64,000 nt of DNA from Malacoraja senta (taxonomy: Eukaryota): the NCBI GenBank assembly GCA_038087875.1, contig CM075977.1, positions 37,820,001-37,884,000 on the forward strand. The letters run 5' to 3'. The translations under genes were made by a program, and so were the position numbers. Shown one piece after another: positions 3,901 to 46,542 of this stretch. The notes below the pieces were generated by a model. That model worked only from the letters and a program-made list of their open reading frames with translations, ran no database searches and was not told where the DNA came from. How positions within the stretch are numbered: the first letter of the stretch is position 1; each line of letters begins with the position of its first letter.

Positions 3901-4700
3901 CAGTTCAACTCTGCCTTGTGGTCGGCCACGGCTCAGCTGTATGGTGCGCAGCTGCATCATACCACCACGTATCACCCTCAGGCCAACGGGTTGGTCGAGC
4001 ACTTCCACAGACATTTGAAATTGGCGTTGAAGGCGTGGCTCACTGGCCCGGATTGGGTGGACCAATTACCTTGGGTGTTGCTGGGGATCCGCATGGCTCC
4101 TAAGGCGGATTTGGACACATCTTCCGTGGAGCTGGTGTATGGTGCGTCGCTGTGGGTGCCTGGGGATTTCCTTCCTGTGGCTCGCCGGTCGCCAGAGCCC
4201 GCCTTGTCTGAGCTGGTGTGTCTGCGTGAGAGAGTGGGGGTCCTGGCTCCTGTTCCCACTTCCCACCATACACATTCCGGTGTATGTGCCGCCGGTGTTT
4301 AAGGACTGCGCTTTTGTCTTTGTTCGCAGGGACTCGCATTGTTCTCCACTCCAGAGGCCTTATGAGGGGCCTTTCCAGGTGTTGCGGCTTGGGGTCGCGA
4401 CTTTTGTATTGGATGTCGGGGGTCGTGAGGAGATCATGTTGGTGGCCTGCCTCAAGCCTGCTCATTTGGATGTCGACAGCCCGGTGGTGGTGGCCCAACC
4501 CCGGCGTAGGGGTTGACCGCCGGCCACGCCCTGTTCCCCGGTTGCACCTGTTGTGCCTATTTCTCCTTTTCCGCCTGTTTTCCCTGTTCCGCCTGGGGCG
4601 TCAGTTGTGCCAGTTCCTCCTGCTCTGCCCGTGGCACTGGTTGTGCCTGTCCCTCCTGTCTCCACTCGGTCTGGGCGGGTCGTTCGGACGCCCGCTTGTT
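950..4700 (+). pseudogene. Gypsy gag-pol pseudogene (short/deleted gag, protease, RT, RNase H, integrase)
   Basis: YYHQRWGAEARQC knuckle; protease RFLVVSGAEISIIP (catalytic D lost); RT SPWASPLHMVPK, AFQRLMD, VFVYLDE; RH DAS..VG, FTDHKPL; integrase HxxH..CIPC, SDRGAQF, YHPQANGLVE; LQRPYEGPF; many frameshifts and stops. Confidence 0.93.
2019..2470 (+). mobile_element. 5' fragment of the GC-rich non-autonomous repeat (family of 16289-17132) embedded in the Gypsy RT
   Basis: Similar to 16289-16760 (T-rich tract, G-run, GGGGAAACC.TTTCCCAGTCACT.CCTGG, CGGCCTACCA.CTGGATTGG); interrupts RT between DRYPV and LKNAVQAFQR. Confidence 0.85.
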
Positions 4701-11500: not shown

Positions 11501-11965
11501 TGTCCCTTTTTGATTTTTGCCCTTGATTTTTCTGCCTGCCACTTTTACTTTTCACCTTGCTACCTGTTGCTTCTACCCTCATTTTACACCCCTCTGTCTC
11601 TCTACTCATGCTCCCATTCACCTGCCACATTAGTTTAAATCCTCCCCGACAGCACTAGCAAACACTCCCCCAAGGACATTGGTTCCATTCCAGCCCAGGT
11701 GCAGACCGTCCTGTTTGTACTGGTCCCACCTCCCCCAGAACTGGTTCCAATGCCCTAGAACTTTGAATCCCCCCCCTTGCACCATTTTTCAAGCCACGTA
11801 TTCATCTGCAATATCCTCCTATTTCTACTCTGACTAGCACATGGCACTGGCAATAATCCAGAGATTATTACCTTTGAGGTCCTACTTTTAAGTTTATCTC
11901 CTAGCTCCCTAAATTCGCCTTGTAGGACCTCATCCCGTTTTTTACCTATATCGTTGGTGCCAATG
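8578..11965 (-). mobile_element. CR1 LINE, 5'-truncated within ORF1; ORF2 frameshifted
   Basis: ORF1 SGNH-esterase remnant HIGTNDIGK; APE NARSIRNK, GITETWL, MGDFN, SDHN; RT YLDFQKAFDKV, GVPQGS, FADD; (TTTCTATG)n tail. Confidence 0.95.
8644..11630 (-). pseudogene. CR1 ORF2 (APE endonuclease + reverse transcriptase), fragmented
   Basis: ORF pieces 11040-11630, 10463-11140, 10020-10385, 8996-9928 and 8644-9015 tile one ORF2. Confidence 0.93.
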
Positions 11966-19830: not shown

Positions 19831-22410
19831 CTCTCACAGTACAAAATCTCCACTAGAGTGTATCTTAAATGTTTAGGCGTTGTAAAGGGGGGGCACCCTC
19901 TGAATGAGAGGTGGAAACAGATACTATAATAACTTTAAAAAAGGAGTTAAGTGTATGTATGAAGAGAAATGTTTCAGGAACATTCGAGGAAGGAGAATAT
20001 GAGTGTATCTAACTGGATAGATCTATAAGATCAATGATACCGGGACAATGGGCAATAGGGCCTTCATCTGTGCTATGTCATAGTTTGAGAATAATGTACT
20101 CAGGACAATATTTATCAGCAGTTAGCAATGAAAGAATAATATTTAACAACCTCCTGTGATCATTCACTGGGTTCAGTTTGGCTGTTGCAAAATGTCAAAT
20201 TATGTTCCTGTTCACTCACCTACTACTTGGCAAGACACAGTACAAATACAAACCCTTTGGTAAGACTGCAAAATTACTTGTGCTCTCAATCATAGCCTCT
20301 GGAATTCTAGCCTCCATGAGAAATCCATGGAGTTCATATCAAAGGAACAATACTTGGAAGGATCAGTCAATTGTGTCAATAAATGGCACAGAATGTTGTT
20401 ATTCCACAATAATATCAGCACTGTGCTGAGCTGAGGCTTTATAGGACATTGGTGAGGCCACATTTAGAATATTGTGAGCAGTTTCGAGCCCCAACACTTT
20501 TCCAACACGGCCTATCACCTTCCAAACCATGGCATTTCAAATTCTTATTTAAATCTACGAGTTTATTCCACAGTAGAATTTGTCAATACTTTCCATTTAC
20601 GAATTTGATAATTTCCTGGTTAGACAGTATATGGCCGGTTTAAGCTTTGTTTAGAACGATTTACAAATAAATTAAATGGCTATCTATTTCTATAAAACTG
20701 CCTTTGTCCAAAAATTAGAGTTTCTTCTAAATAATAGGATGTGAATCTGAAAATAAAAATTGTAATGCAGCTGCAATTTTTTATCATATCCCACTGTATA
20801 AGTACAGTATGTGACGGTTAAATTTATCTTTTAATCTCCTTGAGCATTTTGCAAGATTTCGGTAATTCCTTTCTCACTTTGTCATCCTAATTCATTGTGG
20901 TACAACTACTTCTCAGTTCATAGTTTCAGTTTGAGATCTCGACATGATAGTGCAGGCATATTACTGAGTGACTGATAACCAAAAAGAGTCATAACAAAAC
21001 AAGCTTGTTTGCACAAAAAACATGGTGTCAATGCTTTGCACAGAAGGGAAAGGACTTGTACAAGGCACTCTGCGATAGAAAATCCACTTAACTGGATCGG
21101 GGCATTCCAGTACTTCCAGAATGTGGAAGACTTTGGAATTTGAACTTTCCCTTTTTCTTTGTAAATGGCGCCAAAATATGGCAACTGTGCAATTGTGGGT
21201 TGTGCAAAAGAATTTCACATTGCTGTGCATACATGACAATGAAGAACCATTGAACACAACTGGGGAAGTGCAATTCAGCCAGGGATGTGTCAAGATTCTG
21301 GACCTAAGCCTTTCTCACAAAGTGTCCATTCCAAATAAACCGAGCAGAAGATCCACATCCATAGGATGCTTTCACCACAGCTCTGCAGTTTTTCATTCAC
21401 ATCTACCTCATGTGTCCCCCATCTCCATCCCAAAGTCCTTGAACAAGCTGTCACACTGGATTCTGTGGTTCTGTCTCTTACAGTCATTTAAACTCCAGTC
21501 AGGCTTACTCTGCACTGAAGTGACTCGAACCAAACTTCCAAAGAAAGTTGTGGATGCAGAACTGAAGGGGTGTAAATGTTTAAAGGTTCAAAGGCAAGAA
21601 GGAGATACTGATGTAGAGCAGGTCCAAGGATAATTCATACACCAATGTCATCAGTTCTGAGCCTTTTTCTAAGAATTGCACAGATTTGCCCTTCATGACC
21701 TGAGGTGTCCTCTTTAGGTTTATAGTAACATGTCGGCCTGTAAATCTAGAGTTCTGGTTTAATGATCAGGAAGCGTGATTTAAAGTTCCACCATGATAGC
21801 CATTCAGTCAAATAAATATGGGTGCAAAACTGGTATCATTAAAATTACGATGAAACACTGTCATTAAGAATACACTCAAGGGAATCTGGCAAGTTTACCT
21901 TATCAAATCTGCATGTGACCCCAGAACCATAGGGCTTATCTTTGTCACCCTGTAAAATGTCAGCCATTTCCAAAGACCACAGAAGAGTTATTAGTTTATA
22001 GAGTCAATATCATATCTATCTATATACTATTAAAACTGTGTGTGTGTGTGGATGTGTGTGTGGATGTGTTTATTTATTTGTGGGTGTCACATTTGGCCTT
22101 TGATTCCTTGCTCCACCAAAACCACACGCGAAAACTCCGCGATTTTTTCCATTATGCTAGACATTACACTTTTACATACCCTAACACACTCCTTATTAGA
22201 TTTAGACATTTTTATGTCCCCCCCCCACCCCCCCCCCCCCCCCCCCCACCCACCTCACTCGCTCATTTTGTCTCCTCCTGCTGGCCAGCCACCATAACGG
22301 CTGCTGCCGACCAGCTCTGCTCCAAAAACGCCGCAAATTTCTTTCTTTCGCTAGCGATTTTCGCCCCGGGGCTGAAGCGCGTTCGGGGTCCAGCACCAAC
22401 GTGTCTGCTC

Positions 22411-22614
22411 NNNNNNNNNNNNNNNNNNNNNNNNNNNNNNNNNNNNNNNNNNNNNNNNNNNNNNNNNNNNNNNNNNNNNNNNNNNNNNNNNNNNNNNNNN
22501 NNNNNNNNNNNNNNNNNNNNNNNNNNNNNNNNNNNNNNNNNNNNNNNNNNNNNNNNNNNNNNNNNNNNNNNNNNNNNNNNNNNNNNNNNNNNNNNNNNNN
22601 NNNNNNNNNNNNNN
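22411..22614. other. Assembly gap
   Basis: N run. Confidence 1.
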
Positions 22615-22895
22615 TCTTTGATTCGTTACTCCACCAAAACCAGACACAAAAACGCCGAGCTCTCCTCCAAAAACGGCGAGATTTTTCCCATTTCGCTAGC
22701 GATTTTACTTCCTCCACTCCCCCCCCCCCCCCCCCCCCCCGGCCCGGCTCTGTCATGCTGGCCGAAGCCAAAGATCGCCTGCTCCCCCCACTGCTTTTCG
22801 CCGTCCTCGCTGGCTTGCACTGTCTGAAAACCTCGCGCGTCAACGGCCTGTCGGCCCGCAGGTGCATTGTGGCCGTACCCAGCGTCCCGATGGGT

Positions 22896-23000
22896 GTACG
22901 CAGCGTCTTAACGTTTTACGCAGCGTCTTGACGTCGTACGCAGCGTCTTGACGTCGTACACAGCATCTTGATGTCGTACGCAGCGTCTTGACGGCGTACG
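22896..23000 (+). repeat. 20-bp minisatellite (GTACGCAGCGTCTTGACGTC), ~5 copies
   Basis: Direct tandem copies. Confidence 0.9.
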
Positions 23001-23096
23001 CCTAGCGCGTGGCGTTGCGCGATGACATCAGGCCGCCCCCTCCCCTTGCAACCGCGCGTTGCGGGAACAGACCCAACGGGTCTGCACTTGGTCTAG

Positions 23097-24238
23097 TAAT
23101 TATTAAAAGTCCGATCTTGTACGTGTGTATATGTGTGTGTGCATATATGTGTTCAAGAAGGAACTCTCAGTCTGAAGAAGGGTTTCGGCCCGAAACTTTG
23201 CCGACATCAGTCTGAAGAAGGGTTTCGGCCTGAAACGTTGCCTCATTCCTTCGCTCCATAGATGCTGCTGCACCCGCTGAGTTTCTCCAGCACTTTTGAC
23301 TACCTTTGTGCATATATGTAGTTGTCTTTACATCTTTGCAAAAACACTAGGCAGTAACTATTACATTTTTACATATCCCGATTGACATTTTTACGTCGAG
23401 GCCGGGAACACCTTATCTGAACATTTTTTGCTTTATTTCTCGACTTATTCATGACTCATTACTGATTAAAAGTCTAAAAAAGTCAAAAGACTTTGAAATT
23501 AAAACGACTGATGACGTCACAATGGCTCAGCTAGCAGTGATCAGCCTCAATGGAGATTTCATTCAATATTTGACACATTATTCGTGATTAAAGCTTTAAA
23601 AATGCCAACTTTCACAAGATTTTTACATATTCTGATTCACATTTTTCCCCTCCAGGCCGAGATCACCCTCACTGAACATTTTATGCTTTATTTCTCGACT
23701 TGTTACTGATTAAAAGTAAGAAGTTTAATGACATCAAAAGACTTTGAATTTAAAACGACCAGCTTTCACTGATGACGTCACAATGGTTCAGCTAGCAGTG
23801 ATCATCTTCACTGAAGATTTCATCCTATATTTGACAAGTTATTCGCAATTAAAGCTTTAAAAATGCCAACTTTCACAAGATTTTTACATATTCTGATTCA
23901 CATTTTTCCCCTCTAGGCATAGATCACTTTCACTGAACATTTTATGCTTTATTTCTTGACTTATTACGGATTAAAGTTTAACAATATCAAAAATCAAAAT
24001 GACCAGCTTCAACTGATGATGTCACAATGGCTCAGCTAGCAGGGGGAGGGCGAATTGCTATTGCAACACGCAGGGCAAGTGCAATTGGAATTTTTTTTAA
24101 AGAGCACTGCTGAGGGAGGCAAGGGGAGTGCTGAAATCTTATGTTCGGGAATAGCTTGAGTTGGAGGGCCACACCTCCCGTTGGGGCTACGGGTAGGGTA
24201 CGAGTGTGTTGGGGGAGCAGACCCAACGCACTTGGTCT
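23097..24238 (+). mobile_element. Non-autonomous Helitron module 2 with three ~250-bp internal repeats
   Basis: Starts TAATTATTAAAAGT (missing TCTA probably at 22015-22018); GATGA(C/T)GTCACAATGG.TCAGCTAGCAG recurs at ~23510, 23771 and 24015; ends CAGACCCAAC[6-bp deletion]GCACTTGGTCT. Confidence 0.8.
23151..23306 (+). mobile_element. 156-bp Penelope-type short insertion with two tandem hammerhead-core motifs
   Basis: 13-bp TSD TGTGCATATATGT (23138-23150, 23307-23319); CTGAAGA-stem-GAAA twice, 40 bp apart. Confidence 0.8.
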
Positions 24239-24444
24239 CCTATTATACTAAAACTCTTCCCTTTGTTCTCAACAATCTAAATTTCTGTGTGTATGCAGGG
24301 TTGTGTTGGGTTTCTTTTAATCTCTTCCAAAACACTTGGCCACAGCCTTCCCATTTTCACCCATGCTACTCACATTTTTTCCCTCGAAGGGATAAACATC
24401 TTTCCGTCGCATTCCAACCTATATTTCCAAAGTATTTAAAGTTT

Positions 24445-24778
24445 TATTTATATATTTATTTAATTCTTTATTTCGAACAGAATAAAAGAATAAAAAAGCA
24501 AGTGTGAAACAGCATACAAAAAACAAAACAAGAATATTTATAAAGTGTCATAAACAATATCTATAAATAAATGAAATCGTATGTGCCCGAAAAGGAGCAG
24601 GAAGAAGCCAAAGCTTATTAATTCCCACCCCATATTCAACTGCTTATAATTATCTGATACAAATTTAGCAGCTATATGTACACCATATGTACACCAGCAG
24701 CTATATGTACACCACATTATTTACATTTATACACTAATCAAATATTTACAAACCAAAAACAAAAAAAGAGAAAAAGAG
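24445..24778 (-). mobile_element. AT-rich LINE 3'-UTR fragment (L2/Crack-like) nested in module 3
   Basis: TTTATTTCGAACA...CGAAAAGGAGCAGGAAGAAG motif; AGTTT on both flanks. Confidence 0.45.
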
Positions 24779-25009
24779 AGTTTAATCGTTTATTTCCAAA
24801 ATTAACTACTTTTCAGTGGGAGACTCTTGCAGCACTTTCCATTGATGATGTCACAGTGCCATCTCACAGACGTCCAATCACAATGGATCTCATTTATATA
24901 TGACATCACAATGGGACAGGGATGGGAGATTGCAACCTTCACATTTTTCCACGAGTGTGATCAACCTAACGTGCACAATTAAATGAGTTAAAATAGAACA
25001 AGTTATCCT

Positions 25010-25345
25010 CCCCTCCCTCTAAACCCCCCTCCCTCTCTACCCCCCTCCCTATCTCCCCCTCCCTCTCTACATCCCTCCCTATCTACCCCCTCTGTCTCTA
25101 TTCCCCACCCTCTCTGCCCCCCCCTCCTGTCTGCCCTCCCCCTCCCTCTCTGCCCCCTCCCTGCCCCCTCCCTCTCTGCCCCCTTCCGTCTCTGCCCCCT
25201 CCATCTCTGCCCCCTCCCTCTCTGCCCCCTCCCTCTCTGCCCCCCCACTCCCTCTCTGCCCTCCCTACCTCTCTGCCCTCCTCTCCCTCTCTGCTCCCCC
25301 TCCCTCTCTGCACCCCCCTCCCTCTCTGCCCCCCCCCCTCTCTAG
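25010..25345. repeat. (CCCCTCCCTCTCTGC)n-like simple repeat
   Basis: Tandem C-rich units; similar units at 34131-34185. Confidence 0.85.
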
Positions 25346-26013
25346 GGAGTGGTGAGCATTTGGGACCTATGGGTGAGTGTTGGAGTATTGCGTTCGGGAA
25401 CCAGTCCTCCCCTGTGACACCCCCCTACCCCTCAAACTCTACCCCCTCTCTCTTCCTCTCTACCCCTCTCACCCTCTCCCTCTCTACCACCCCCATCCCT
25501 CTCTAGCCGCGCATGCGCAATTGGGGGCTATGCGTGAGTGGATAGGGCGGGGGATGGGGTAAAAGGAGCAAATGAATAATATTAATATAATATCAAGGGG
25601 CGGGGGTTAGTCTGTGTGTGTGAAGGGTGGTTAGTGTGACTCCGCAGGCTGCCCTACCCCCGCAACTGCTCGTTGAGGGGATGGGACCCAACGGGCCCCC
25701 CTTGGTTTCTCTATACTATTACTAAAAGTCTCATCTTGACCACTTCCTGTCTACATTGTAAATAAATTTTAGAAAAACGCTACCGTATATTGCTATATCG
25801 CTACCGTATATTCGCCATCTTACTCACCGTCCTCCTGTCCTCCAACCGCCCCAAGATTTTTTTCGATCGATGAAATAATAAAAAAGTTATGAATGTTTTA
25901 AAAATCATGAGATCAGCTGATTGGTCTTCTCGTCTGTCAATCACCATGATGAAGGTCACGCCCCTTCCGGGGGCCCAGGAGAATAAAGCCCTGGAGGCCG
26001 GACATGAGTCAGT

Positions 26014-26660
26014 TACTTTGCCTTGCACTTTGCTTGAAATGGAATTGGAAATGAAAATGAGTTCTTGGCCTTGCTCTGTGCTTGAAATTGAAATGGAAAT
26101 GGAAATGAAAATGAGTTGTTGGCCTTGCACTGTGCGTGAAATGGAAATGGAAATGAAAATGATTTGTTGGCCTTGCACTGTGCTTAAAATGGCAATGGAA
26201 ATGAAAATGAGTTGTTGGCCTTGTAATGTGCCTGAAATGGAAATGGAAATGAAAGTGAGTTGTTGGCCTTGCACTGTGCTTGAAATGGAAATGAAAATGA
26301 GTTGTTTTCCTTACACTGTGCTTGAAATGGAAATGGAAATGAAAATGAGTTGTTGGCCTTCCATTGTGCTGGAAATGGAAATGGAAATGAGTTATTGGCC
26401 TTGCACTGTGCTTGAAATGGAAATGAAAATGAATTGTTGGCCTTGCACTGTGCTTGAAATGGAAATGGAAATGAGTTGTTGGCCTTGCACTGGGCTTGAA
26501 ATGGAAATGAAAATGGTTTGTTGGCCTTGCACTGTGCTTGAAATGGAAATGGAAATGAAAATGAGTTGTTGGCCTTGCACTGTGCTTGAAATGGAAATGA
26601 AAATAAGTTGTTGGCCTTGCACTGTGGTTGAAATGGAAAGGAAATTAGTTGTTGGGCCTA
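26014..26660 (+). repeat. Minisatellite, 36/42/48-bp units (TTGGCCTTGCACTGTGCTTGAAATG[GAAATG]nAAAATGAGTTG), ~16 copies
   Basis: Direct tandem copies differing in GAAATG hexamer number. Confidence 0.95.
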
Positions 26661-27104
26661 CCTGAAACCACTCATTTCAGCCCACAAGGCCCCTATTAGC
26701 CAAGAAACCAGTTCCTTTTGCCTAAAATGCCCACATTAGCCCAGGAGGAGAATTTTGGCCCAAAAGGCCCATGCCTGGCCTGGAAAAGTCCATAAAAAGT
26801 GCCTTTCACTGAGATTTCATTTTTTTTTTAAAGAGTCCCTTTGACCCATCAGGACTGTACCAGCCCACGAGGATTCCCTTCAGCCCATCAGTAAGTATTC
26901 CCCCTGTAAGTATTAAACCCCACCCCAGTATTTTTCTCTCTCCCTTCATTGGCTCCCTGTGAGATCCAGGCCAGGATAGACTTTCCTCCTTCATTGCTGT
27001 GATCTGCAGAAAAAGATGACAAATGTCTAAAATTAATTCTCCACCCTCTCCCCCTTCTCTCTCACATTCTCTCGCCTGCTTTGGGCAGAATTTCTGGCAG
27101 TTTC

Positions 27105-28054
27105 TGAGCTGCCAGCCCACCAGCCCTGAGTGACTGATCTGCCAGCCCACCAGCCCTGAGTGACTGATCGGCCAGTCCACCAGCCCTGAATTAATGAGCT
27201 GCCATCCCACCAGCCCTGAGTGACTGATCTGCCAGTCCACCAGCCCTGAGTGACTGAGCTGCCATCCCACAAGGCCTGAGTGACTGAGCTGCCAGCCCAC
27301 CAGGCCTGTGACTGAGCTGCCATCCCACCAGGCCTGAGTGACTGAGCTGCCAGCCCACCAGGTCTGAGTGACTGAGCTGCCAGCCCACCAGGCCTGAGTG
27401 ACTGAGTTGCCAGCCCCCTCAGGCCTGGTGAGCTGCCAGCCCACCACGCCTGTGACTGAGCTGCCAGCCCACCACACCAGAGTGACTGAGCTGCCAGCCC
27501 ACCAGGACTGAGCTGCCAGCCCACCAGGCCTGAGTGACTGAGCTGCCAGCTCACCAGGCCTCAGTGACTGAACTGTCAGCTCACCAGGCCTGAGTGACTG
27601 AGCTGTCAGCCCACCAGGCCTGAGTGACTGAGCTGCCAGCCCACCAGGCCTGAGTGAGTGAGCTGCTAGCCCACCAGGCCTGAGTGACTGAACTGCCAGC
27701 CCACCACACCTGAGTGACTGAGCTGCCAGCCCACCAGGACTGAGCTGCCAGCCCACCAGGCCTGAGTGACTGAGCTGCCAGCTCACCAGGCCTCAGTGAC
27801 TGAACTGTCAGCTCACCAGGCCTGAGTGACTGAACTGTCAGCCCACCAGGCCTGTGTGACTGAGCTGCCAGCCCAACAGGCCTGAGTGACTGGGCTGCCA
27901 GCCCACCAGGCCTGAGTGACTGAGCTGCCAGCGCACCAGGCCTGAGTGAGTGAGCTGCTAGCCCACCAGGCCTGAGTGACTGAGCTGCCAGCCCACCAGG
28001 CCTGAGTGACTGAGCTGCCAGCCCACCAGGCCTGAGTGACTGAGCTGCCAGCCC
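27105..28054 (+). repeat. 30-bp minisatellite (GAGCTGCCAGCCCACCAGGCCTGAGTGACT), ~32 copies
   Basis: Direct tandem copies. Confidence 0.95.
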
Positions 28055-28116
28055 AAGAATCCATTCCGCCGACAATGTCCATACTAGCCCTCTGGAAACC
28101 AGTCCCTTCGGCCCAC

Positions 28117-28494
28117 AACACCCATACTAGTGCTCCAGAAAGCCCACCCCCCCACCCCTCACTGGCCACCAATATTGGAATTGGTGGAGAGGTGGAATAT
28201 TGCATTGGGGGCCAGTCCTCCCATGTGAACATAGTCCCCAATGGGTCCTACTTAGTCTAGTATAACTCTAAAACTCTCATCTTGTACATGTGTATATGTG
28301 TGTGTCTTTACATCTTCGCAAAAACACTACGCAGTAACGATAACATTTTTACATATTCTGGTTCACATTTCTCCCCTCTAGGCAGAGATTACCTTCACTG
28401 AACATTTTATGCTTTATTTCTCGACTTATTACTGAAAACGTTTAAAAACATCAAAACATCAAACATCAAAACATCAAAAACATCAAAAATCTTT
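28117..28494 (+). repeat. Left copy of ~378-bp direct repeat flanking L1 (spans module 4/5 junction)
   Basis: Near-identical to 33173-33552. Confidence 0.95.
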
Positions 28495-31400
28495 TTTTTT
28501 AATTTTTTTTTTTTTCATTTTTTTAAAATTAGAAGTAAGTACAATTGTATACAATCATATTTTCATAATACATTTTATGTACAGCTTCTTATTTTTTAAA
28601 TTTTGTAATAATGAAGAAAAAGAAAAATAAATTAGATAATGAAGAATAGAAAAATGTGAGATACTGTATATAGTGTGTGAAAAAGAAAAATAGAGAGTGA
28701 AAGAAGAAAGTTAAGAAATAGAAAATAGAAGAAAAAGAGTAAAAGAAGAAAAGAGAAGAAAAAGAAAAGAGAAGTAAGGAGATCGTATTTATAAACTTGA
28801 CCATTCCTCACCCAGTCACGGATTAGCTTTTACACTTGTGTTGCACCATATGTTTCCAAAAAGACGACAAATGGAGACCAACTCGTTATGAATTGGTCAA
28901 ATTTATCTATTAGGAGGAATAGCATTTCCTCAAAATGTGCGGTATCCAACATACTTGCAATCCACATTTTGAGCGTTGGTATTGGTGTATTTTTCCAAAA
29001 TTTCAACATTAATTTTTTTGCTATTATTAAACCATAATTAAAAAATAATTTTTGAGATGGGTTCAATTTGTTCCCATCTTCCATTACCCCAAATATAATC
29101 AATTCATTATTGGGTTCCATTTTTGTCTTAAATAATTTTGTGAATATTTCGAAAATATCACTCCAAAATCCATGAAGTTTTATACAAGAAACAAAAGAGT
29201 GTGTTATAGTTGCGTCTTGGGTTAAACATTTATCACAAATGGGGGATATATTTGGATAAAATTTATTTAATCTTATTTTTGAGTAATATAATCTATGTAA
29301 AATTTTAAATTGAATTAGATTATGTCTTGCGTTAATCGAACATTTGTGAATGTATGTCAAATACTTTTCCTATGTAGCCTTCGTAATTTTTATCAATAAT
29401 TCCCGTTCCCACTTTTCTCTAATTACCTCGGTCGCAGGTAAATCTATATTTAAGATACTATTATATAAATATGATATTAATTTTTGTGTGTCAGCTTTAA
29501 TATTCATTACTTCTTCTAGTAAATCAGGAGTTATTTTTTGATATCCCTGTATGTATGTCTTCAAGAAATTGCAAATCTGAAAATATTTAAAATAATGAGT
29601 GTTTTTCAATTTAAATTTTAATTGTAATTGTTGAAATGATAGTAAATCTCCCATTTCATACATATCCCCGATCCTTTTAATTCCTAAACTTTCCCATTGA
29701 TTATATATTTTATCCATCATAGATGGTTTAAATAAAGGATTATTCGCTATCGGTGTTAACAATGATAGGTTTCTTAGTTTTAAGGATAATTTTATTTGTT
29801 TCCATATTCTTATTGTATCTTGTATAATTGGGTTTTTCTTATATATTGTATTGTTCATTTTTTTCGGGGAGAAGAGGATTGTTCCTATATTACAAGGATA
29901 ACAATCCTCTTTCTCCATTTTTATCCATTCTGTCTGTTGGGTTGAACTATCCAACCAGTAAATTATATTCTTAATATGTATTGCCCAATAGTAATACAAA
30001 AAATTTGGGAGTGAAAGTCCCCCGACATATTTTGGTTTACATAAATGTTCTTTTTTAATTCTATGTGATTTATAGTCCCAAACAAAATTAGTAATGTTAG
30101 CATTCAATTTAGAAAAAAAATATTTTGGTACATATACTGGTATAGATTGAAATAGGTATAATAACTGTGGTAGAAAGCTCATTTTAATAGCATTTATTCT
30201 GCCTATTAATGATAAAGGAAGTGTTTTCCAAAATGTAATCGTTATATTAAGTTTATTTATTAAGGGTATAAAATTGGCGTTTAATAAAGCTTTATGTTTG
30301 CTAGTAATCTGAATACCCAGATATTTAAATTTTTCTGTTGCTATTTTAAAGGGGAATTTCAATAAGTGTGTAGATTCTTGAGGTTTTAACGTCATAATTT
30401 CACTTTTGTTCCAATTTATTCTATATCCAGAAAAGGACCCGAATTCCTCTATTAAATTTAATAAATTTGGTATGCTCGTTTGTGAATTTGTTGTATATAA
30501 CAGAATATCGTCTGCATACAATGAAATTTTATTATTTGAGTCTCTAGTATTATAACCCTGAATATTCGGATGGCTTCTTATACTTTCAGCCAGAAGTTCT
30601 ATCATAAGGGCAAATAGCAGGGGTGATAAAGCACACCCCTGCCTATTACCCCTTGATAATTGAATTTTTTGAGACAACATGCTGTTAGTTAATATTCTTG
30701 CCATCGGTTTATCATATAATAATTTCACCCATGCAATAAAGTTCTCTCCCATATTAAATTTTTGTAATACTTTGTATAAATACTGCCATTCTACCTGATC
30801 AAATGCTTTCTCTGCGTCCAAAGAAATAATTGATAAGTCTTCTTCCTCCACTTTAGGTGAGTACATTATATTAAACAGGCGTCTCAAATTATTAAATGAA
30901 TATCTTTTGGGTATAAACCCCGTTTGATCAGGGTTTATCAATTTACTAATATATTTGCTTAGTCTTCTGGCTAAAGTCTTTGCTAGGATTTTCTGATCTG
31001 TATTTAATAGTGATATAGCTCTATATGAGCCCGGTTCCTCTAGGTCTTTATCTTTCTTTGGAATAAGCGTAATAGTTGATTCTGCTAATGTTTCAGGTCA
31101 TTTATTTTCTTTAAAAACGTAAGTATATAAATTAAATAGATAGGGGGTCGTTATCTCATGAAACTTTTTATAAAATTCATTACTAAAACCATCTGGTCCC
31201 GGTGTCTTACCATTTTTCAACGATTTTATTGTTTCACCTATTTCTTCGATTGTAATTTGCGCTCCTAGTTCTTCTTGTTCCAAAAGGTCAAGTTTTGGTA
31301 GATTACAGTTATCTAAAAAAAATTTAATTTTACTATCTTCTGTTTTGGTTTTTGATGTGTATAAATTTTGATAAAATTGAACAAATCTTTTATTAATATC

Positions 31401-33172
31401 TTTAGGTAGTGTTAGTAATTCACCATTCTCGGATTTAATTTTATTTATAGTATTTTCCTTTTCCTCTTTTTTCAGTTGACGCGCCAACAGCTTATGTGGT
31501 TTGTCACCAAACTCAAAATATTCCTGTTTTGTAATTTGGAATAATCTTATTACTCTTGCCGAGAGAATTCGGTTAAGTTTAAATTTCAGTAGTATTATCT
31601 TATTATGTTTATCTATAGTGGGATCTTTAGCATTGTCTAACTCTAACTGTCTTATTTCTTGTTCTAACCACATTTGTTCTGTTTTATTCATCTTATTTTG
31701 AAAATTTTCATATGAAATTATAATTCCTCTAATAAATGCTTTAAAAGTTTCCCATAGTAAAGAAGGTGAGGTACCTGGTGTATCATTTATCTCAAAAAAT
31801 AATTTCATTTGTTGTTTCAAGTATTGATAACCCTGTAAGTCATTTAATATATGTGTATTAAACCTCCAAAAAAAATGTTTACCCGGCGTTCCCTCAAATT
31901 TTACTGAAAAAGTCAACAGAGAGTGATCAGAAATACTACTAATATGATATGTTGGGTTAATTGTATATGGCATTAATTTCCTATCCACTAAAAAATAATC
32001 AATTCTTGAATATGTTTTATGTACCGAAGAGTAAAACGAATATTCCCTTCCTGCTGGATTAGCAGATCTCCATACATCTGTTATGTTAGTATTTTTTATA
32101 TATGTATTTAGAAGTTCACTAGTCTTGGATTTTATATTACTCCTTCTTTGTTTTGCTGATTTGTCTAAATATGGATCTAAAACACAGTTGAAATCCCCTC
32201 CTATTATCACATTTTGATAATTAAACTCCAGTATTATATCTATAATTTTCTCAAAAAATTGAGGGTTATCAAAATTCGGAGCGTAAATATTTACCATAGT
32301 TATTGGGGTAGCATAAATTTCTCCCGAAACTATGATATACCTTCCCTCTTTATCTGATATAGTATTCTTTAATTTGAACGGTATACCTATCCGAATAAGA
32401 ATAGCCGTACCTCTAGATTTAGAAGTAAATGATGAATAATATGTTTGGCCTATCCACTTTGCCTTTAATCTCATTTGTGTTTCCTGTTTCATGTGAGTTT
32501 CTTGCAAGTAGATTATGTCGCTTTTCAAAGATTTTAAGTGAGCAAAAATGTTACCCCTCTTTATTGGTTCGTTGGCACCCCTTATATTCCAACTACAGAA
32601 TGTGATTCCTCCATTCTTTATTTGTCTATCTTCTTGCATTGTATATCAAAGTAATATTCTTGAATCATATGGTGCTGACAAATACCTCCGTGTTCTGGAC
32701 GTTGGGTGGTCATTCCAAGTTTTTAAGTTTACATTACATCTCCTTCTCCAAAAGTGCCTTAGATAAAGCAAGAAAAATTGTGATTTACAATTAATTAAAC
32801 ACAAACTAAGTAAATACAAATTTGTATAGTGATTAAAAAAAAAGTGAAATTAAGGTATCTAAGAACAGGTACCTTAAAGAGAGATAGCCACCTAAGGTGG
32901 CGAAGAATTTATAGACTTCCATTGATGTTGTTTTACATTGAGCCCCAATCCCTTATTAACACCTCGTAAAAAACTACAGACCGTCTCATATCTTGTTTAT
33001 TCTTGTTTAACTTTATCAAACTAGCATTAGTAAAAAGCAAAAAGCCGCAGATATAAAATATTAAAAAGTAAAAAAATAAAGCTACCCTACAAGCAGGTAC
33101 CGAGGGGTTAACCTCATTCCTGGTTTTTTTCCAAGTTTATGTTGCGTTCCCACCCAAAAAGAACGCAACATA
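28495..33172 (-). mobile_element. Young L1-clade LINE, 5'-truncated in the inter-ORF spacer (no ORF1)
   Basis: Poly-T (poly-A tail on minus strand) at ~28492-28523; AT-rich 3' UTR; complete ORF2; ~530 bp of non-coding sequence upstream of ORF2. Confidence 0.95.
28830..32639 (-). pseudogene. L1 ORF2 (APE + RT + C-terminal Cys/His domain), ~1269 codons, two in-frame stops
   Basis: SWNIRG, YLQETH, GGDFN, SRIDY, SDH; SLDAEKAFD, RQGCALSP, LYADD; CDKC..HSFVSC; three ORF pieces in one frame, separated by TGA (31098-31100) and TAG (29370-29372). Confidence 0.95.
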
Positions 33173-33552
33173 AACACCCATACTAGTGCTCCAGAAAGCC
33201 CCCCCCCCCCCCACCCTCACTGGCCACCAATATTGGAATTGGTGGAGAGGTAGAATATTGCATTGGGGGCCAGTCCTCCCATGTGAACATGGTCCCCAAC
33301 GGGTCCTACTTAGTCTAGTATAACTCTAAAACTCTCATCTTGTACATGTGTATATGTGTGTGTCTTTACATCTTCGCAAAAACACTACGCAGTAACGATA
33401 ACATTTTTACATATTCTGGTTCACATTTCTCCCCTCTAGGCAGAGATTACCTTCACTGAACATTTTATGCTTTATTTCTCGACTTATTACTGAAAACGTT
33501 TAAAAACATCAAAACATCAAACATCAAAACATCAAAAACATCAAAAATCTTT
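33173..33552 (+). repeat. Right copy of ~378-bp direct repeat flanking L1
   Basis: Near-identical to 28117-28494. Confidence 0.95.
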
Positions 33553-33647
33553 GAATTTAAAATGACCAGCTTTCACTGATGCCGCCTCACACACGGAATC
33601 TTCCACGCGCTTCGAGTGACGTCACCCCACCGGGTGCTTCACCCTGT

Positions 33648-34118
33648 GCCCCCGGGTTATTCACACTCCCCCTCCCCCCCGGGTTATTCACACCCCCCGC
33701 ATCGCCGAAAAAGACGCCACCGGTGGAACAAAGGACGAGCCCGGACATTGAGTCGGGCCTATTGGAGTGTTTTTTTTCAGGCTTATGTTTCAGAGAAAAT
33801 GAGTGAGACCAAGCAGAGAAAGCAATGTTTCTGAGGAGCTAGAATGGCACAACCAACTAATAGGTCGCGGCTTGAATTTCTCTCCGCACAGCCCAGCTCA
33901 AAAAGGCAGCAAACATACCCTGGGTTATTTACCCCCCTCCCCCCCGGGTTATTCACACCCCCACCCCCCCCGGGTTATTCACCCCCCCCGGGTTAATTAC
34001 ACTCCCTCCCCCCAGCCCCCTCTGGGTTATTCACACTCCCCCCCCACGGGTTATTCAGACCCCCCCCCCCTGAGTTATTCACACTCATCCTCCCCACCAC
34101 CTGGGTTATTCACACCAT
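33648..34118 (+). repeat. Degenerate minisatellite (CCCCGGGTTATTCACAC..)n in module 5
   Basis: About ten GGGTTATTCAC cores separated by C-runs. Confidence 0.8.
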
Positions 34119-34190
34119 CCCGCACATTCCACCCCCTCCCTCTCTGCCCCCACCCTCTCTGCCCCCCTCCCTCTCTGCCCCCCTCACCCT

Positions 34191-34606
34191 CTTTCAATGT
34201 AGACCGGAGAGTGAGGGGACCAGCTCAAGAGCAAAGATCATAGAGCAGAGTGGGGTCAGCAAGCGATGGATAACAGGACAGCGGGCGGTGGAGCTTACTC
34301 CTGTGTCAGCGCGAGTAACCTCAATTGGGAATGGAGGGTTATGGTCTGAGTGCAGGTAGATGGGACTAGGGGGAAGAAAGAAGAAAGAAAAAAAAAAAGT
34401 GTTCGGCACGGACTTGAAGGGCCGAGATGGCCTGTTTCCGTGCTGTAATGGTTATATGGTTATATGGTAATGGTCCCTTGATCGTGCTGACACAGGAGTA
34501 AGCTCCACCGCCCGCTGTCTGTTATCCATCGCTCACTGACCCACTCCGCTCTATGATCTTTGCTCTTGAGCTGGTCCCCTCACTGGCCGGTCTCCTACAT
34601 TGAAAG
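34191..34606. repeat. ~120-bp inverted repeat (arms 34191-34314 and 34482-34606) with a CR1 3' fragment in the spacer
   Basis: Arms are reverse complements with few mismatches; spacer 34327-34472 is a CR1 3' UTR with (GGTTATAT)n tail. Confidence 0.85.
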
Positions 34607-34799
34607 ACACGGACCATGCATTGTCATCCAGCGCAGCAAGTGAGGCCATGTCCTGCTCCCGGCGGCAGTCGGAATTTAAGGATTTGCCGGAAGCGGCTGA
34701 CATGAGCGAGGCCGGCAAGCGGCAGGAGAGAGGTGAGAAATTCTATGTCCCGCCAGCCATTTTTCAAAAATGTAGCAACTCAAAATGGGGGAGTGTCTT

Positions 34800-34836
34800 C
34801 GACACAGGTGCGTCTTCTTTGCCGGGAAATACGGTA
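34800..34836. mobile_element. Single TIR-like end of a Tc1-mariner/pogo-type MITE
   Basis: ..GTGCGTCTTCTTTGCCGGGAAATACGGTA (reverse complement TACCGTATTTCCCGG); no partner end found. Confidence 0.5.
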
Positions 34837-35961
34837 CATAAAATAGACAACGATTACAACTGATGGAGAGAGGTGGCCAATGGGCAATGGTGTTTTTTCT
34901 CCATATCTATTTCTTCAAATGGAATCAAGGTGTTCAGCCAAAGCAACTCTCACATGGATGCATCTTGGAATATTCCCTCTTCCTTCTCTTCTTCTTTGTC
35001 AAGTCAGCCGGCATTGCCATTCTTTATGGTTGATGGAAGAGAGCTACTCTATCAATCTCTATCTCAGATACATGAAACTAAGAAGGCAAGCAGATGGATG
35101 AGCTTCTTGGCTGGACCCACCCTAATCTGACTGATTGCTGAAGAGTAATATGCTAATGTCTGAATGATACTAATTCCATTATCAATTCTATTCTGCTGCG
35201 TCACTGCCTTATTTCTGATATATGTGCTCACCCAGTTATGTGGAGTCTTAGACAATAGACAATAGACAATAGGTGCAGGAGTAGGCTATTCGGCCCTTCG
35301 AGCCAGTACTGCCAATCACTGTGATCATTGCTGATCATCCACAATTAGTACCCCGTTCCTGCCTTCTACCCCTATCTTTAAGAGCTCTATCTAACTCTCT
35401 CTTGAAAGCATCCAGAGAATTGGCCTCCACTGCCTTCTGAGGCAGAGAATTCCACAGATTCATAACCCTCTGTGTGAAAACGTTTTTCCTCATCTCCATT
35501 CTAAATGGCTTATTCTTAAATTGTGGCCCCTGGTTCTGGACTCCCCCAACACTGGGAACATGTTTCCTGCCTCTAGTGTATTCAAACCATTAATAATCTT
35601 ATGTTTCAATAAGATCCCCTCTCATCCTTCTAAATTCCAGAGTATACAAGCCCAGCCGCTCCATTCTCTCAGCATATGACAGTCCCGCCATGAATCTACG
35701 CTGCACTCCCTCAATAGCAAGAATGTCCTTCCGCAAATTTGGAGACCAAAACTGCACACAATACTCCAGGTGTGGTCTCACTAGGGCCCTGTACAACTGC
35801 AGAAGGACCTCTTTGCTGCTGTACTCAACCCCTCTTGTTATGAAGGCCAACATGCCATTAGCTTCCTTCACTGCCTGCTGTACCTGCATGCTTACTTTCA
35901 TTGACTGATAAACAAGGACCCCCAGATCTCATTGTACTTCCACTTTTCCCAATTTGACACC

Positions 35962-36100
35962 GGGGTGGAAGATTGCAACCTTCACGTAGTCCGCCCTATT
36001 TCGACTAATGCAATCAACTCGACGTGCACAAACGGAAGATCAAATAGAACAAGTTGTCTAACAACTTTAGGCTGTGCACGCCACACAAAAGAAGAAGAAG
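35962..36100 (+). mobile_element. 139-bp retroposed fragment with (GAA)n tail
   Basis: 11-bp TSD AATTTGACACC (35951-35961, 36101-36111); related copy at ~24915-25008. Confidence 0.85.
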
Positions 36101-37828
36101 AATTTGACACCATTCAGATAATAATCTGCCTTTCTGTTTTTGCCACCAAGGTGGTTAACCTCACATTTATCCACATTAAACTGCATCTGCCATGCATCTG
36201 CCCACTCACCCAACCTGTCCAAGTCACCCTGCATCCTCATAGCATCTTCCTCACAGTTCATCCTGCCAGCCAGCTTTGTGTCATCTGCAAATTTGCTAAT
36301 GTTACTTTTAATTCCTTCATCTAAATCATTAATGTATATTGTAAATAGCTGCGGTCCCAGCACCGAGCCTTGCGGTACCCCACTATTCACTGCCTGCCAT
36401 TCTGAAAGGGACCTGTTAATCCCTACTCTTTGTTTCCTGTCTGCCAACCAATTTTCTATCCATGTCAGTACCCTACCCCCAATACCATGTGCTCTAATTT
36501 TGCCCACTAATCTCCTATGTGGGACCTTATCATATGCTTTCTGAAAGTCCAGGTATACTGCATCCACTGGCTCTCCTTTGTCCATTTTCCAAGTTACATA
36601 CTCAAAAAATTCCAGAAGATTAGTCAAGCATGATTTCCCCTTCGTAAATCCATGCTGACTCGTAAATCCATCCTGTTACTGCTATTCAAATGTGTCGCTA
36701 TTTCATCTTTTATAATTGACTCCAGCATCTTCCCCACCACCATCAGGCCCTGGGGATTTATCAGCCTTCAGTCCCATCAGTCTACCCAACACCATTTCCT
36801 GCCAAATGTGAATTTCCTTCAGTTCCTCCGTCACCTTAGATCCTCTGCCCACTAGTATATCAGGGAGATTGTTTGTGTCTTCCTTAGAGAAGACGATCCA
36901 AAGTACCTGTTCAACTCATCTGCCATTTCCTTGTTCCCCATAATAAATTCACCTGTTTCAGTCTTCAATAGTCCAACTTTGGTCTTAACTAATTTTTACT
37001 CTTCACATACCTAAAGAAGCTTTTACTATATTGTTGGCTACCTTATCTTCACACCTCATCTTTTCTCCCCATATTGCCTTTTTAGTTATCTTCTGTTGCT
37101 CTTTAAAAGATTCCCAATCCTATGGCTTCCCGCTCATGTGTGCTATGTTATACTTCTTCTCTTTTATTTTTATGCTGTCCCTGACTTCCCTTGTCAACCA
37201 CGGTCGCCCCTTACTCCCCTTGGAATCTTTCTTCCTCTTTGGAATGAACTGACCCTGCACCTTCTGAATTATTCCCAGAAATACCTGCTATTGTTGTTCC
37301 ACTGTCATCCCTGCTAGGGTATCTTTGCAGTCAACTTTGGCCAGTTCCTCCCTCATGGCTCCATAGTCCCCTTTGTTTAAGTGTAATAGTGACACTTCCG
37401 ATTTTCCCTTCTCCCTCTCAAATTATAGATTAAAACTTATCGTATTATGGTCACTATCTCCTAATGGCTCCTTTACCTCGAGTTCCCTTATCAAATCAGG
37501 TTCATTACACAACACTAAATCCAGAGTTGCCTTCTCCCTGATAGGCTCCAGTACAAGCTGCTCTAAGAATCCATCTTGGAGGCACTCCACAAACGCTCTT
37601 TCTTGGGGTCCAGTACCAACCTGATTTTCACAGTCTACCTTCATGTTGAAATCTCCCATAACAACCGTAGCATTACCTTTGCGACATGCCAATTTTAACT
37701 TGATTTAACTTGCACCCTATATCCAGGCTACTGTTTGGGGGCTTGTAGATAACTCCCATTAGGGTCTTTTTACCCATACAATTCCTCAGTTCTATCCATA
37801 CTGACTCTACATCTCCTGATTTTATGTC

Positions 37829-46409: not shown

Positions 46410-46542
46410 NNNNNNNNNNNNNNNNNNNNNNNNNNNNNNNNNNNNNNNNNNNNNNNNNNNNNNNNNNNNNNNNNNNNNNNNNNNNNNNNNNNNNNNNNNN
46501 NNNNNNNNNNNNNNNNNNNNNNNNNNNNNNNNNNNNNNNNNN
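46410..46542. other. Assembly gap
   Basis: N run. Confidence 1.

What the first reader, a model, noticed from the sequence alone, without database searches (positions are those of the whole stretch)
22015..34190. Head-to-tail train of five different Helitron-type cassettes with no intervening host DNA
Seen: starts of the form (TC)TA..TA.TAAAA(C/G)T at 22019, 23097, ~24237, ~25709 and 28261. Each start after the first directly follows an end made of a GACCC-AAC-GGGTC-type hairpin and CTTGGT/CTTAGT-CT(AG), at 23096, 24238, ~25708 and 28260. All modules have the same orientation, and most bodies are unrelated (2 and 5 are relatives). Established: Helitrons have 5'-TC, a 3' hairpin + CTRR, no TSD, and insert at A^T. 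Inference: this is not tandem amplification of one element. It looks like successive docking of distinct families at each other's termini, or one composite rolling-circle unit built by terminator read-through. The result is an integron-like cassette array, each cassette with different cargo.
Basis: partly seen in the sequence, partly recalled or inferred. Interest (0 to 1): 0.78.

Follow-up and report, generated by a model that had tools for sequence, protein, structure and literature searches.

The report
Head-to-tail stack of five skate Helitrons
Five different non-coding rolling-circle transposons (Helitrons) lie end to start with no host DNA between them in a skate-like fish genome, most likely because each newcomer landed in or at the front end of the one before; such stacking is known from maize, bats and fungi.

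Summary
A three-part junction motif (CCCAAYG hairpin core, CTTRGT, then TAAAAST) occurs five times, all on the + strand and all inside 23072-33334. About 4e-5 are expected by chance. One of the five is a copy made by a later LINE-associated 378-bp duplication, which this finding does not list.

The units are non-autonomous Helitrons. A related public contig (L029) carries copies of the same family, two of them complete and bordered by non-Helitron DNA on both sides. They show termini A|TC...hairpin...CTAG, followed by T in two of three cases.

Two junctions read CTAG|TA and lack the TC. The missing stubs (TCATA, TCTA) sit just left of unit 1. Removing unit 1 rebuilds a canonical 5' end for unit 2. 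I read the array as grown leftwards, by insertions at A^T sites in or at the resident's 5' end (unit 5 oldest, unit 1 newest).

A composite moved as one piece by read-through is not excluded. The integron analogy is not supported: there is no recombinase, and the cargo is minisatellites.

Caveats: an unread gap lies inside unit 1, units 2 and 3 lack CTAG, and unit 5 has no 3' end.

First readers of this scan noted at least eight other head-to-tail Helitron stacks in this genome (unchecked). This is a known kind of arrangement in a host where I found no published description. Interest is low to moderate.

The parts
22010..22018 (+). Two short 5' stubs, TCATA (22010-22014) and TCTA (22015-22018), preceded by host A. 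I infer they are the severed first bases of units 5 and 2.
   Evidence: Joined to 28261.. and 23097.., they rebuild 5' ends that align with solo copies. The pattern TC.?TA+TCTA occurs at 4.7e-5 per position in the window.
22019..23096 (+). Unit 1. The 5' end is TCTATATACTATTAAAAC followed by (GT)n. Inside are internal repeats, poly-C and a 20-bp minisatellite. The 3' end has two hairpins and then CACTTGGTCTAG. It contains the assembly gap.
   Evidence: 7-bp stem CAGACCC/GGGTCTG, z -2.4. CpG o/e is 1.05.
22411..22614 (.). Assembly gap inside unit 1. Its content is unknown and was not filled.
   Evidence: The flanks share the same internal repeat unit.
23097..24238 (+). Unit 2, a relative of unit 5. 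Its 5' end lacks TC (TAATTATTAAAAGTC). It holds three tandem units of about 260 bp. The 3' end lacks CTAG and folds as a 13-bp variant hairpin.
   Evidence: D8, D12; z -3.4.
23151..23306 (+). SINE fragment inserted in unit 2, flanked by a 13-bp target duplication, TGTGCATATATGT.
24237..25709 (+). Unit 3. The 5' end is (TC)CTATTATACTAAAACTC. It holds C-rich 15-16-bp repeats and an internal partial 3' region at 25329-25417. The 3' end is GGGACCCAACGGGCCCCCCTTGGTTTC, with CTAG damaged.
25710..28260 (+). Unit 4. It has an intact 5' end, TCTATACTATTACTAAAAGTCTCATCTTGACC. It holds a 42/48-bp minisatellite and a 30-bp minisatellite. The 3' end is ...CTTAGTCTAG.
   Evidence: One search shows that L029 copies match its 5' end at 82% and its 3' end at 86%.
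28261..28494 (+). Unit 5, first part. Its 5' end lacks TC (TATAACTCTAAAACTCTCATCTTG).
28495..33172 (-). Non-LTR retrotransposon with endonuclease, reverse transcriptase and zf-RVT pieces in three broken ORFs and a poly-A tail. It is inserted in unit 5.
33173..33552 (+). Second copy of the 378-bp direct repeat (first copy 28117-28494). It carries a duplicate of the unit 4 end / unit 5 start junction at 33318|33319.
   Evidence: (D4).
33553..34192 (+). Rest of unit 5. Homology to unit 2 runs to about 33589. GGGTTATTCAC repeats and C-rich repeats follow. No 3' terminus is present.
34190..34607 (.). Palindrome (foldback) that replaces or cuts off the 3' end of unit 5.

Best explanation
This is a stack of five different non-autonomous Helitrons of one terminus family, in a skate-like genome.

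Shown:
- The family's true ends are A|TC(TAT...) and hairpin + about 10 nt + CTAG.
- The units share about 30 nt at the 5' end and about 45 nt at the 3' end, but have different bodies made of minisatellites and other non-coding DNA.

Inferred:
- The stack grew leftwards. Each newcomer integrated at an A^T dinucleotide in the AT-rich 5' terminus of the then-leftmost resident.
- Some insertions fell 4-5 nt inside that terminus. These give a CTAG|TA junction without TC and leave a TCTA or TCATA stub at the far left (junctions 23096|23097 and 28260|28261).
- Other insertions fell exactly at the A|TC boundary. These give a 3' end abutting an intact TC (25709|25710, perhaps also about 24237).
- Under this reading, unit 5 came first and unit 1 last.
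- Later events were a SINE insertion into unit 2, a LINE insertion into unit 5 with a 378-bp duplication, and loss of unit 5's 3' end.

An autonomous RepHel element elsewhere in the genome must have supplied the transposase.
For: - The junction motif occurs 5 times against 4e-5 expected, all on one strand.
- L029 holds two complete copies with non-Helitron DNA on both sides (A|TC...CTAG|A and A|TC...CTAG|T) and a third 3' end reading CTAG|T.
- The 5' and 3' ends of all units align with those copies.
- Deleting 22019-23096 joins TCTA to TAATTATTAAAAG. This gives a canonical 5' end preceded by A. TCATA joined to TATAACTC... does the same for unit 5.
- Two stubs match two clear TC-less junctions.
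- The stub pair occurs at 5e-5 per position.
- Unit 4 keeps an intact TC directly after unit 3's damaged end.
- CpG o/e falls from unit 1 to unit 4: 1.05, 0.66, 0.32, then 0.13 for unit 4 as a whole (0.37 for its non-minisatellite part).
- Published precedents:
  - two different maize Helitrons inserted immediately next to each other (PMC2267711);
  - maize Helitrons said to prefer sites near or inside other Helitrons (PMC3288121);
  - fungal Helitrons inserted into or next to the 5' end of another (PMC5148889).
- Unchecked notes from this scan list at least 8 other head-to-tail stacks in this genome, one with 'CTAG|TATAC junctions'.
Against: - The stub reading is post hoc. The left flank is low-complexity (TCAATATCATATCTATCTATA).
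- A similar TCTA-rich pile precedes a solo 5' end in L029 with no Helitron upstream. A TCTA-rich host target is therefore an alternative source of the 'stubs'.
- Junction 3 can be parsed two ways.
- Unit 5 has CpG o/e 0.63, which breaks the age gradient. CpG content also depends on the cargo.
- No empty sites, no orthologous loci and no genome-wide counts could be examined.
- The gap in unit 1 may hide something.
Confidence: 0.55

Rival explanations
1. All or part of the train (for example units 2-3-4) is one composite Helitron. It would have been built elsewhere by terminator read-through over damaged internal 3' ends, and then inserted here as a single piece.
For: - The two internal ends without CTAG (about 24236 and 25709) are flanked by ends with intact CTAG (23096, 28260).
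- In maize, 99 of 100 internal 3' ends of multi-terminus Helitrons lacked an intact CTAG (PMC3288121).
- Compound Helitrons are known in bats (PMC4224331).
- Unit 3 also holds an internal partial 3' region.
Against: - With roughly 15-25% divergence between the related units 2 and 5, losing CTAG at 2 of 4 ends is about what random decay alone would give (my estimate).
- The only other copy of a unit found, unit-4 type in L029, stands alone.
- This rival does not by itself explain the TC-less junctions and the stubs.
Confidence: 0.2
2. The array grew rightwards. Each newcomer inserted at the non-canonical G^T site just after the resident's CTAG.
For: One of the two models offered for the maize head-to-tail pair (PMC2267711).
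Against: - It predicts CTAG|TC junctions with intact newcomer 5' ends, yet units 2 and 5 lack TC.
- It leaves the TCATA-TCTA stubs at the far left unexplained.
- It needs a non-A^T target each time.
Confidence: 0.08
3. A mixed concatemer formed off the chromosome, by rolling-circle replication that switched between circles of different elements. It then integrated as one piece.
For: - Helitron circles with joined ends are shown experimentally.
- Tandem arrays are ascribed to rolling-circle replication (PMC5876387, PMC12628747).
Against: - Circle junctions are precise CTAG|TC joins.
- Published rolling-circle arrays consist of one element repeated. Here the bodies differ and the junctions are of two types.
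Confidence: 0.07
4. Assembly artefact: repeats were wrongly joined.
For: - A gap sits inside unit 1.
- The region is rich in minisatellites and poly-C.
- The 378-bp duplicate is nearly identical to the original.
Against: - All junctions except the far-left one lie in uninterrupted sequence from 22615 to 46409.
- The four junctions have different sequences, and the bodies on either side are unique in the window.
Confidence: 0.04
5. A dedicated integron-like cassette system that collects cargo modules.
For: Only the ordered, same-strand layout.
Against: - No recombinase, integrase or RepHel ORF lies in or next to the array. The only enzymes there are LINE endonuclease and reverse transcriptase.
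- No known RNA family matches.
- The cargo is minisatellite or non-coding DNA.
Confidence: 0.02

Closest known systems
[quoted passage not shown] 2008, PMC2267711)
   Same: Different non-autonomous Helitrons lie in the same orientation with no host DNA between them. The authors interpret this as consecutive insertions. [quoted passage not shown]
   Different: Maize has two units and a CTAG|TC junction. Here there are five units. Two junctions are TC-less (CTAG|TA) with matching stubs at the left edge.
Helibat tandem head-to-tail copies in Myotis lucifugus (Pritham and Feschotte 2007, as described in PMC2267711 and PMC5876387)
   Same: A vertebrate Helitron with head-to-tail junctions.
   Different: The bat arrays are described as tandem repeats of Helitron elements and ascribed to rolling-circle replication. 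Here the bodies are unrelated.
Maize helA Helitrons with multiple termini (Dong et al. 2011, PMC3288121)
   Same: Several 5' and 3' ends occur in one stretch. Internal 3' ends lack an intact CTAG. The cited cause is a preference to insert near or inside other Helitrons.
   Different: The maize cases are copies that transposed as composites. Whether this array ever moved as a unit is unknown.
Self-insertion and composite Helitrons in Fusarium and Metarhizium (Chellapan et al. 2016, PMC5148889)
   Same: [quoted passage not shown] Three copies in tandem are explained either by repeated insertion into a 5' end or by rolling-circle replication.
   Different: The fungal elements are non-canonical and mostly same-family. 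No stub bookkeeping was reported in the passages I read.
Tandem arrays of truncated Helitrons in plant centromeres (Xiong et al. 2016, as summarised in PMC12628747)
   Same: Arrays of Helitron units with truncated ends, which can seed satellite DNA.
   Different: Those arrays are repeats of a single truncated element, many with several 5' ends and one 3' end. Here the units differ, and four of the five have both ends.

Membership tests
Canonical Helitron (Helitron1 type), non-autonomous | 5' terminus TC | tested here: met
   Units 1 and 4 start with TC, and unit 3 probably does. The two 5' ends in L029 start A|TC. Units 2 and 5 lack TC at the junction, but regain it when joined to the stubs at 22010-22018 (inference).
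Canonical Helitron (Helitron1 type), non-autonomous | 3' terminus CTRR | tested here: met
   CTAG is present at 23093-23096, 28257-28260 and 33315-33318, and at all three 3' ends in L029. It is damaged in units 2 and 3 and absent in unit 5.
Canonical Helitron (Helitron1 type), non-autonomous | Hairpin about 10-12 nt upstream of the 3' end | tested here: met
   Unit 1 has a 7-bp stem that ends 12 nt before the terminus. Unit 2 has a 13-bp variant. The hairpins of units 3 and 4 are weak. Compared with L029 solo copy A (2640-3158 on the reverse strand), the two outer stem pairs of unit 1 changed on both sides: GGGA/TCCC became CAGA/TCTG.
Canonical Helitron (Helitron1 type), non-autonomous | Insertion between host A and T without target-site duplication | tested here: inconclusive
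   A precedes the left edge. One complete L029 copy is A|...|T and the other is A|...|A. The right host flank of the array is lost, and no empty site is available.
Canonical Helitron (Helitron1 type), non-autonomous | An autonomous RepHel partner with the same termini | not testable with these tools
   None in the window. An unchecked scan note (s1-175015) reports an intact transposase-bearing partner elsewhere in the genome.
Helentron / Helitron2 | Short asymmetric terminal inverted repeats, subterminal hairpins at both ends, insertion between T and T | not tested
   I ran no terminal-inverted-repeat or 5'-end fold test. By reading, the ends are TC...CTAG, with a hairpin seen only near the 3' end, and A precedes the 5' end.
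Integron-type cassette array | A linked site-specific recombinase gene, an attachment site, and gene cassettes with recombination sites | tested here: not met
   No such ORF was found, and the cargo is non-coding.
Satellite or tandem amplification of one unit | Successive units are homologous along their length | tested here: not met
   Only units 2 and 5 are related, and they are not neighbours.

The most novel reading that the evidence does not exclude
The transposase of this skate Helitron family homes to the TCTA^TA at the 5' tip of resident copies. Stacks would then grow in one direction across the genome. They would leave one countable 4-5-nt stub per nested insertion, a built-in record of arrival order, and would seed new composite elements and satellites.
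Probability: 0.2. Interest if true: 0.55.

Novelty: new member of a known kind. Interest (0 to 1): 0.3.

Why it matters
Two things would be of some use if confirmed genome-wide.

First, I found no paper in the held library that mentions Helitrons together with skates. Yet the scan's notes suggest that this family is very abundant there and often stacked.

Second, the pairing of TC-less junctions with stubs gives a simple sequence-only test. It could show whether Helitrons target each other's 5' ends and in which order a stack was built. That bears on how composite, gene-capturing Helitrons and Helitron-derived satellites arise.

As a single locus, this is an ordinary example of a described phenomenon.

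Tried and rejected
1. Alternative parse with the 3' end at CTTRG and the 5' end at TCTAG/TCTCC. Rejected: the 3' ends in L029 that adjoin non-Helitron DNA finish in (G)TCTAG, and its 5' ends start TCTAT.
2. Fishing for other copies through protein searches.
   - The ORFs at 24181-24507 (+) and 25889-26665 (+) gave nothing.
   - The ORF at 27813-28241 (-) gave one useful hit, P0003, among 161 mostly low-complexity matches.
   - A second search with P0003 found only itself.
   - Exact look-ups of ORFs spanning junctions 2 and 3 found nothing.
3. A scan of metagenome contigs for the 3'-end pattern gave 28 hits. All are unrelated: 16 belong to one unrelated repeat family, and the rest look like chance.
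4. The Rfam scan of 21000-35500 found nothing.
5. Pfam on ORFs across the window found only retroelement domains and no RepHel.
6. CpG o/e as an age clock gives a suggestive gradient from unit 1 to unit 4, but cargo composition confounds it and unit 5 breaks it.
7. My first Markov-simulation chance test timed out. I replaced it with an analytic estimate.
Full report
**What is there**

The window is TE-rich vertebrate DNA. Its SINE and LINE content, and the scan's earlier notes, point to a skate- or ray-like cartilaginous fish.

- A 5' start, TCTATATACTATTAAAAC, lies at 22019.
- Four junctions follow, at 23096|23097, about 24236|24237, 25709|25710 and 28260|28261.
- At each junction, a block with a CCCAAYG hairpin core and CTTRGT is followed within 8-18 nt by TAAAAST.
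- This three-part motif occurs five times on the + strand, never on the - strand, and nowhere outside the array.
- About 4e-5 occurrences are expected from the sub-motif frequencies in the rest of the window.

**The gap**

The Ns at 22411-22614 lie inside unit 1.
- The sequence just after the gap repeats the unit that starts at 22098 before it. About 40 of the first 45 aligned bases are identical, and both copies are followed by a poly-C tract.
- So both flanks look like the same element with an internal repeat.
The link between unit 1's 5' half and its 3' half is therefore plausible but unproven.
- All other junctions lie in uninterrupted sequence.

**Anatomy of the units**

- Unit 1 (22019-23096): (GT)n, internal repeats, a 20-bp minisatellite and many CpGs.
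- Unit 2 (23097 to about 24238): three tandem units of about 260 bp. It also carries a SINE fragment at 23151-23306 with a 13-bp target duplication.
- Unit 3 (about 24237-25709): C-rich 15-16-bp repeats, plus an internal partial copy of the family's 3' region at 25329-25417.
- Unit 4 (25710-28260): a 42/48-bp minisatellite and a 30-bp minisatellite.
- Unit 5 (28261-28494 plus 33553-34192): a relative of unit 2, at 73-89% identity.
  - It is split by a 4.7-kb minus-strand non-LTR retrotransposon, whose endonuclease, RT and zf-RVT domains lie in three broken ORFs.
  - That retrotransposon is flanked by a 378-bp direct repeat (28117-28494 and 33173-33552).
  - The repeat duplicates the unit 4 / unit 5 junction, giving a sixth junction at 33318|33319 that this finding does not list.
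  - Unit 5 has no 3' end. A palindrome of about 420 bp starts at 34190.

Apart from units 2 and 5, the bodies are unrelated. No other copy of any unit lies in the window.

**Are they Helitrons, and where exactly are the ends?**

The window alone cannot separate an 'end' from a 'start', because every end abuts a start.

I found outside copies by an indirect route.
- A minus-strand ORF over unit 4's 3' region matched one predicted protein, P0003, at 83% identity over the non-repetitive part.
- Its contig, L029, is a 7.4-kb ENA assembly contig that carries the same SINE families.

L029 holds three copies of the family, none touching another. Coordinates below are on the reverse strand of L029.
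- Solo copy A is a complete unit-4-type copy of about 520 bp. It reads host ...CACA|TCTATTATTATAC ... GGGACCCAACGGATCCCACTTAGTCTAG|ACC....
- Solo copy B lies on the opposite strand. It reads ...TTCCA|TCTATACTATTACTAAAAC ... CACTTAGTCTAG|TATG....
- A third 3' end reads ...CCCAACGGACTCTAG|TTAG.

These copies settle three points.
- The family's ends are the canonical 5'-TC and CTAG-3', with a hairpin about 10-12 nt upstream.
- Copies of the family, including one of unit-4 type, occur alone with these termini.
- My alternative parse (3' end at CTTRG) is wrong.

The hairpins fold as follows.
- Unit 1: clearly, z -2.4.
- Unit 2: a 13-bp variant, z -3.4.
- Units 3 and 4: weakly.

Compared with solo copy A in L029, the two outer pairs of unit 1's stem are changed on both sides, GGGA/TCCC to CAGA/TCTG.

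**The junctions are of two kinds**

With the true termini known:
- At 25709|25710, unit 4 keeps its full 5' end, identical in its first 18 nt to solo copy B in L029. It directly follows unit 3's damaged end, GTTTC in place of GTCTAG.
- At 23096|23097 and 28260|28261, the upstream CTAG is intact. The downstream unit starts TAATTAT... or TATAAC.... It lacks TC and is 4-5 nt shorter before TAAAA than the other 5' ends.
- The junction near 24237 can be read either way: CTCC|TATTATAC, or GGTC|TCCTATTATAC with 3 nt lost.

**How it was probably built**

The nine bases left of unit 1 are TCATA and TCTA, preceded by A.
- Cutting out unit 1 (22019-23096) joins TCTA to TAATTATTAAAAGTC. The product is a normal 5' end preceded by A.
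- TCATA joined to TATAACTCTAAAAC gives the same result for unit 5.
- This is what nested insertion predicts. A newcomer enters at the A^T 4-5 nt inside the resident's 5' end, the severed stub stays on the left, and the junction becomes CTAG|TA.
- Insertion exactly at the A|TC boundary leaves no stub, and gives a 3' end abutting an intact TC. This is the second model of Du et al. for maize.
- Every step uses a canonical A^T target.

The pattern TC.?TA followed by TCTA occurs at 4.7e-5 per position in the window. I noticed the pattern after the fact.

The model implies leftward growth, with unit 5 first and unit 1 last. CpG o/e is 1.05, 0.66, 0.32 and 0.13 for units 1-4 (0.37 for the non-minisatellite part of unit 4). 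This trend agrees with the model. Unit 5 has 0.63, and cargo composition confounds the measure.

**Weak points**

- The left flank is low-complexity.
- In L029, a TCTA-rich pile also precedes solo copy B's 5' end with no Helitron upstream. The 'stubs' could therefore be a TCTA-rich host target that resembles the family's own 5' end. That would still favour landing on 5' ends.
- I could not examine empty sites, orthologous loci or genome-wide copies.
- A composite that moved as one piece remains possible, especially units 2-3-4, whose internal ends lack CTAG as in maize multi-terminus elements. However, 2 of 4 decayed CTAGs is about what random decay predicts at this divergence.

**What is known**

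- Maize: two different Helitrons lying head to tail, interpreted as consecutive insertions (PMC2267711).
- Bat: tandem head-to-tail copies (cited).
- Maize: 28.7% of helA elements have multiple termini, 99 of 100 sampled internal 3' ends lack an intact CTAG, and there is a stated preference to insert near or inside other Helitrons (PMC3288121).
- Plants: rolling-circle arrays of truncated Helitrons that seed satellites (PMC12628747).
- Bat: compound Helitrons (PMC4224331).

I found no paper in the held library that mentions Helitrons together with skates.

Earlier notes of this scan, unchecked, list at least eight other head-to-tail stacks in this genome, one with 'identical CTAG|TATAC junctions'. 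They also describe an abundant, gene-capturing family with an intact autonomous partner.

**Verdict**

- The train is real and well beyond chance, and its units are Helitrons.
- It is not an integron-like system. There is no recombinase or RepHel gene in the window, no known RNA family, and the cargo is minisatellites.
- It is a long, mixed example of a described behaviour: Helitrons landing on each other's ends.
- The match between stubs and TC-less junctions is a neat, testable detail.
- Interest is 0.3, classed as a new member of a known kind.

Noticed in passing
window 28117-28494 and 33173-33552, around the LINE at 28495-33172 (-): A 378-bp direct repeat flanks a non-LTR retrotransposon that has a poly-A tail. 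The part inside unit 5 is 233/233 identical, and the part inside unit 4 is about 95% identical, with indels in poly-C. It may be a very long target-site duplication or a local duplication. The scan noted it separately (s1-187617).
   Followed up: partly
window 34190-34607: A palindrome of about 420 bp (54-nt arms at 94% complementarity, plus further matching ends) sits where unit 5 should have its 3' end. I saw no target duplication.
   Followed up: partly
window about 23513-23535, 23772-23794, 24013-24035, and 33625-33635: Each roughly 260-bp repeat in unit 2 carries TGATGACGTCACAATGG, which contains a CRE-like TGACGTCA core. Unit 5 has GTGACGTCAC. These are promoter-like motifs carried by the Helitron.
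   Followed up: no
window 22019-23096: Unit 1 has CpG o/e 1.05 at 56% GC, against 0.43 for the whole window. It is either very young or carries a captured CpG-island-like segment.
   Followed up: partly
L029 (reverse strand) about 4626-4660: A TCTA-rich pile (TCTA TCTA CTA TCTA TCT) lies directly upstream of a solo Helitron 5' end. It resembles the left edge of the array. It may be a preferred target or a set of footprints.
   Followed up: no
L029 (reverse strand) 463-528, 2640-3158, 3613-4625: Three Helitron copies lie within 7.4 kb. Two of them converge tail to tail, 455 bp apart, inside another repeat. The family clusters even where copies do not touch.
   Followed up: partly
window 25329-25417: Unit 3 holds an internal partial copy of the family's 3' region. 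It matches 28147-28228 at 70% and stops before the hairpin, so unit 3 may itself be a fusion of two elements.
   Followed up: partly
window 46410-46542: A second assembly gap, outside the finding.
   Followed up: no
window 3269-4018 (+), 8996-11630 (-), 35250-36630: Other retroelement remains: an integrase zinc-binding domain, a LINE with endonuclease and RT pieces, and an RT fragment. The last two share repeats at 76-86% identity.
   Followed up: partly
L001, L004, L006, L008, L009, L011, L012, L014, L015, L017, L020-L023, L027 (JGI metagenome contigs): An unrelated repeat family, found in 15 to 16 of the 28 contigs hit, happens to contain CCCAATGGGTAAATTTCTTAGTCTAG. Homology continues on both sides, so it is not a Helitron end of this family.
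   Followed up: no
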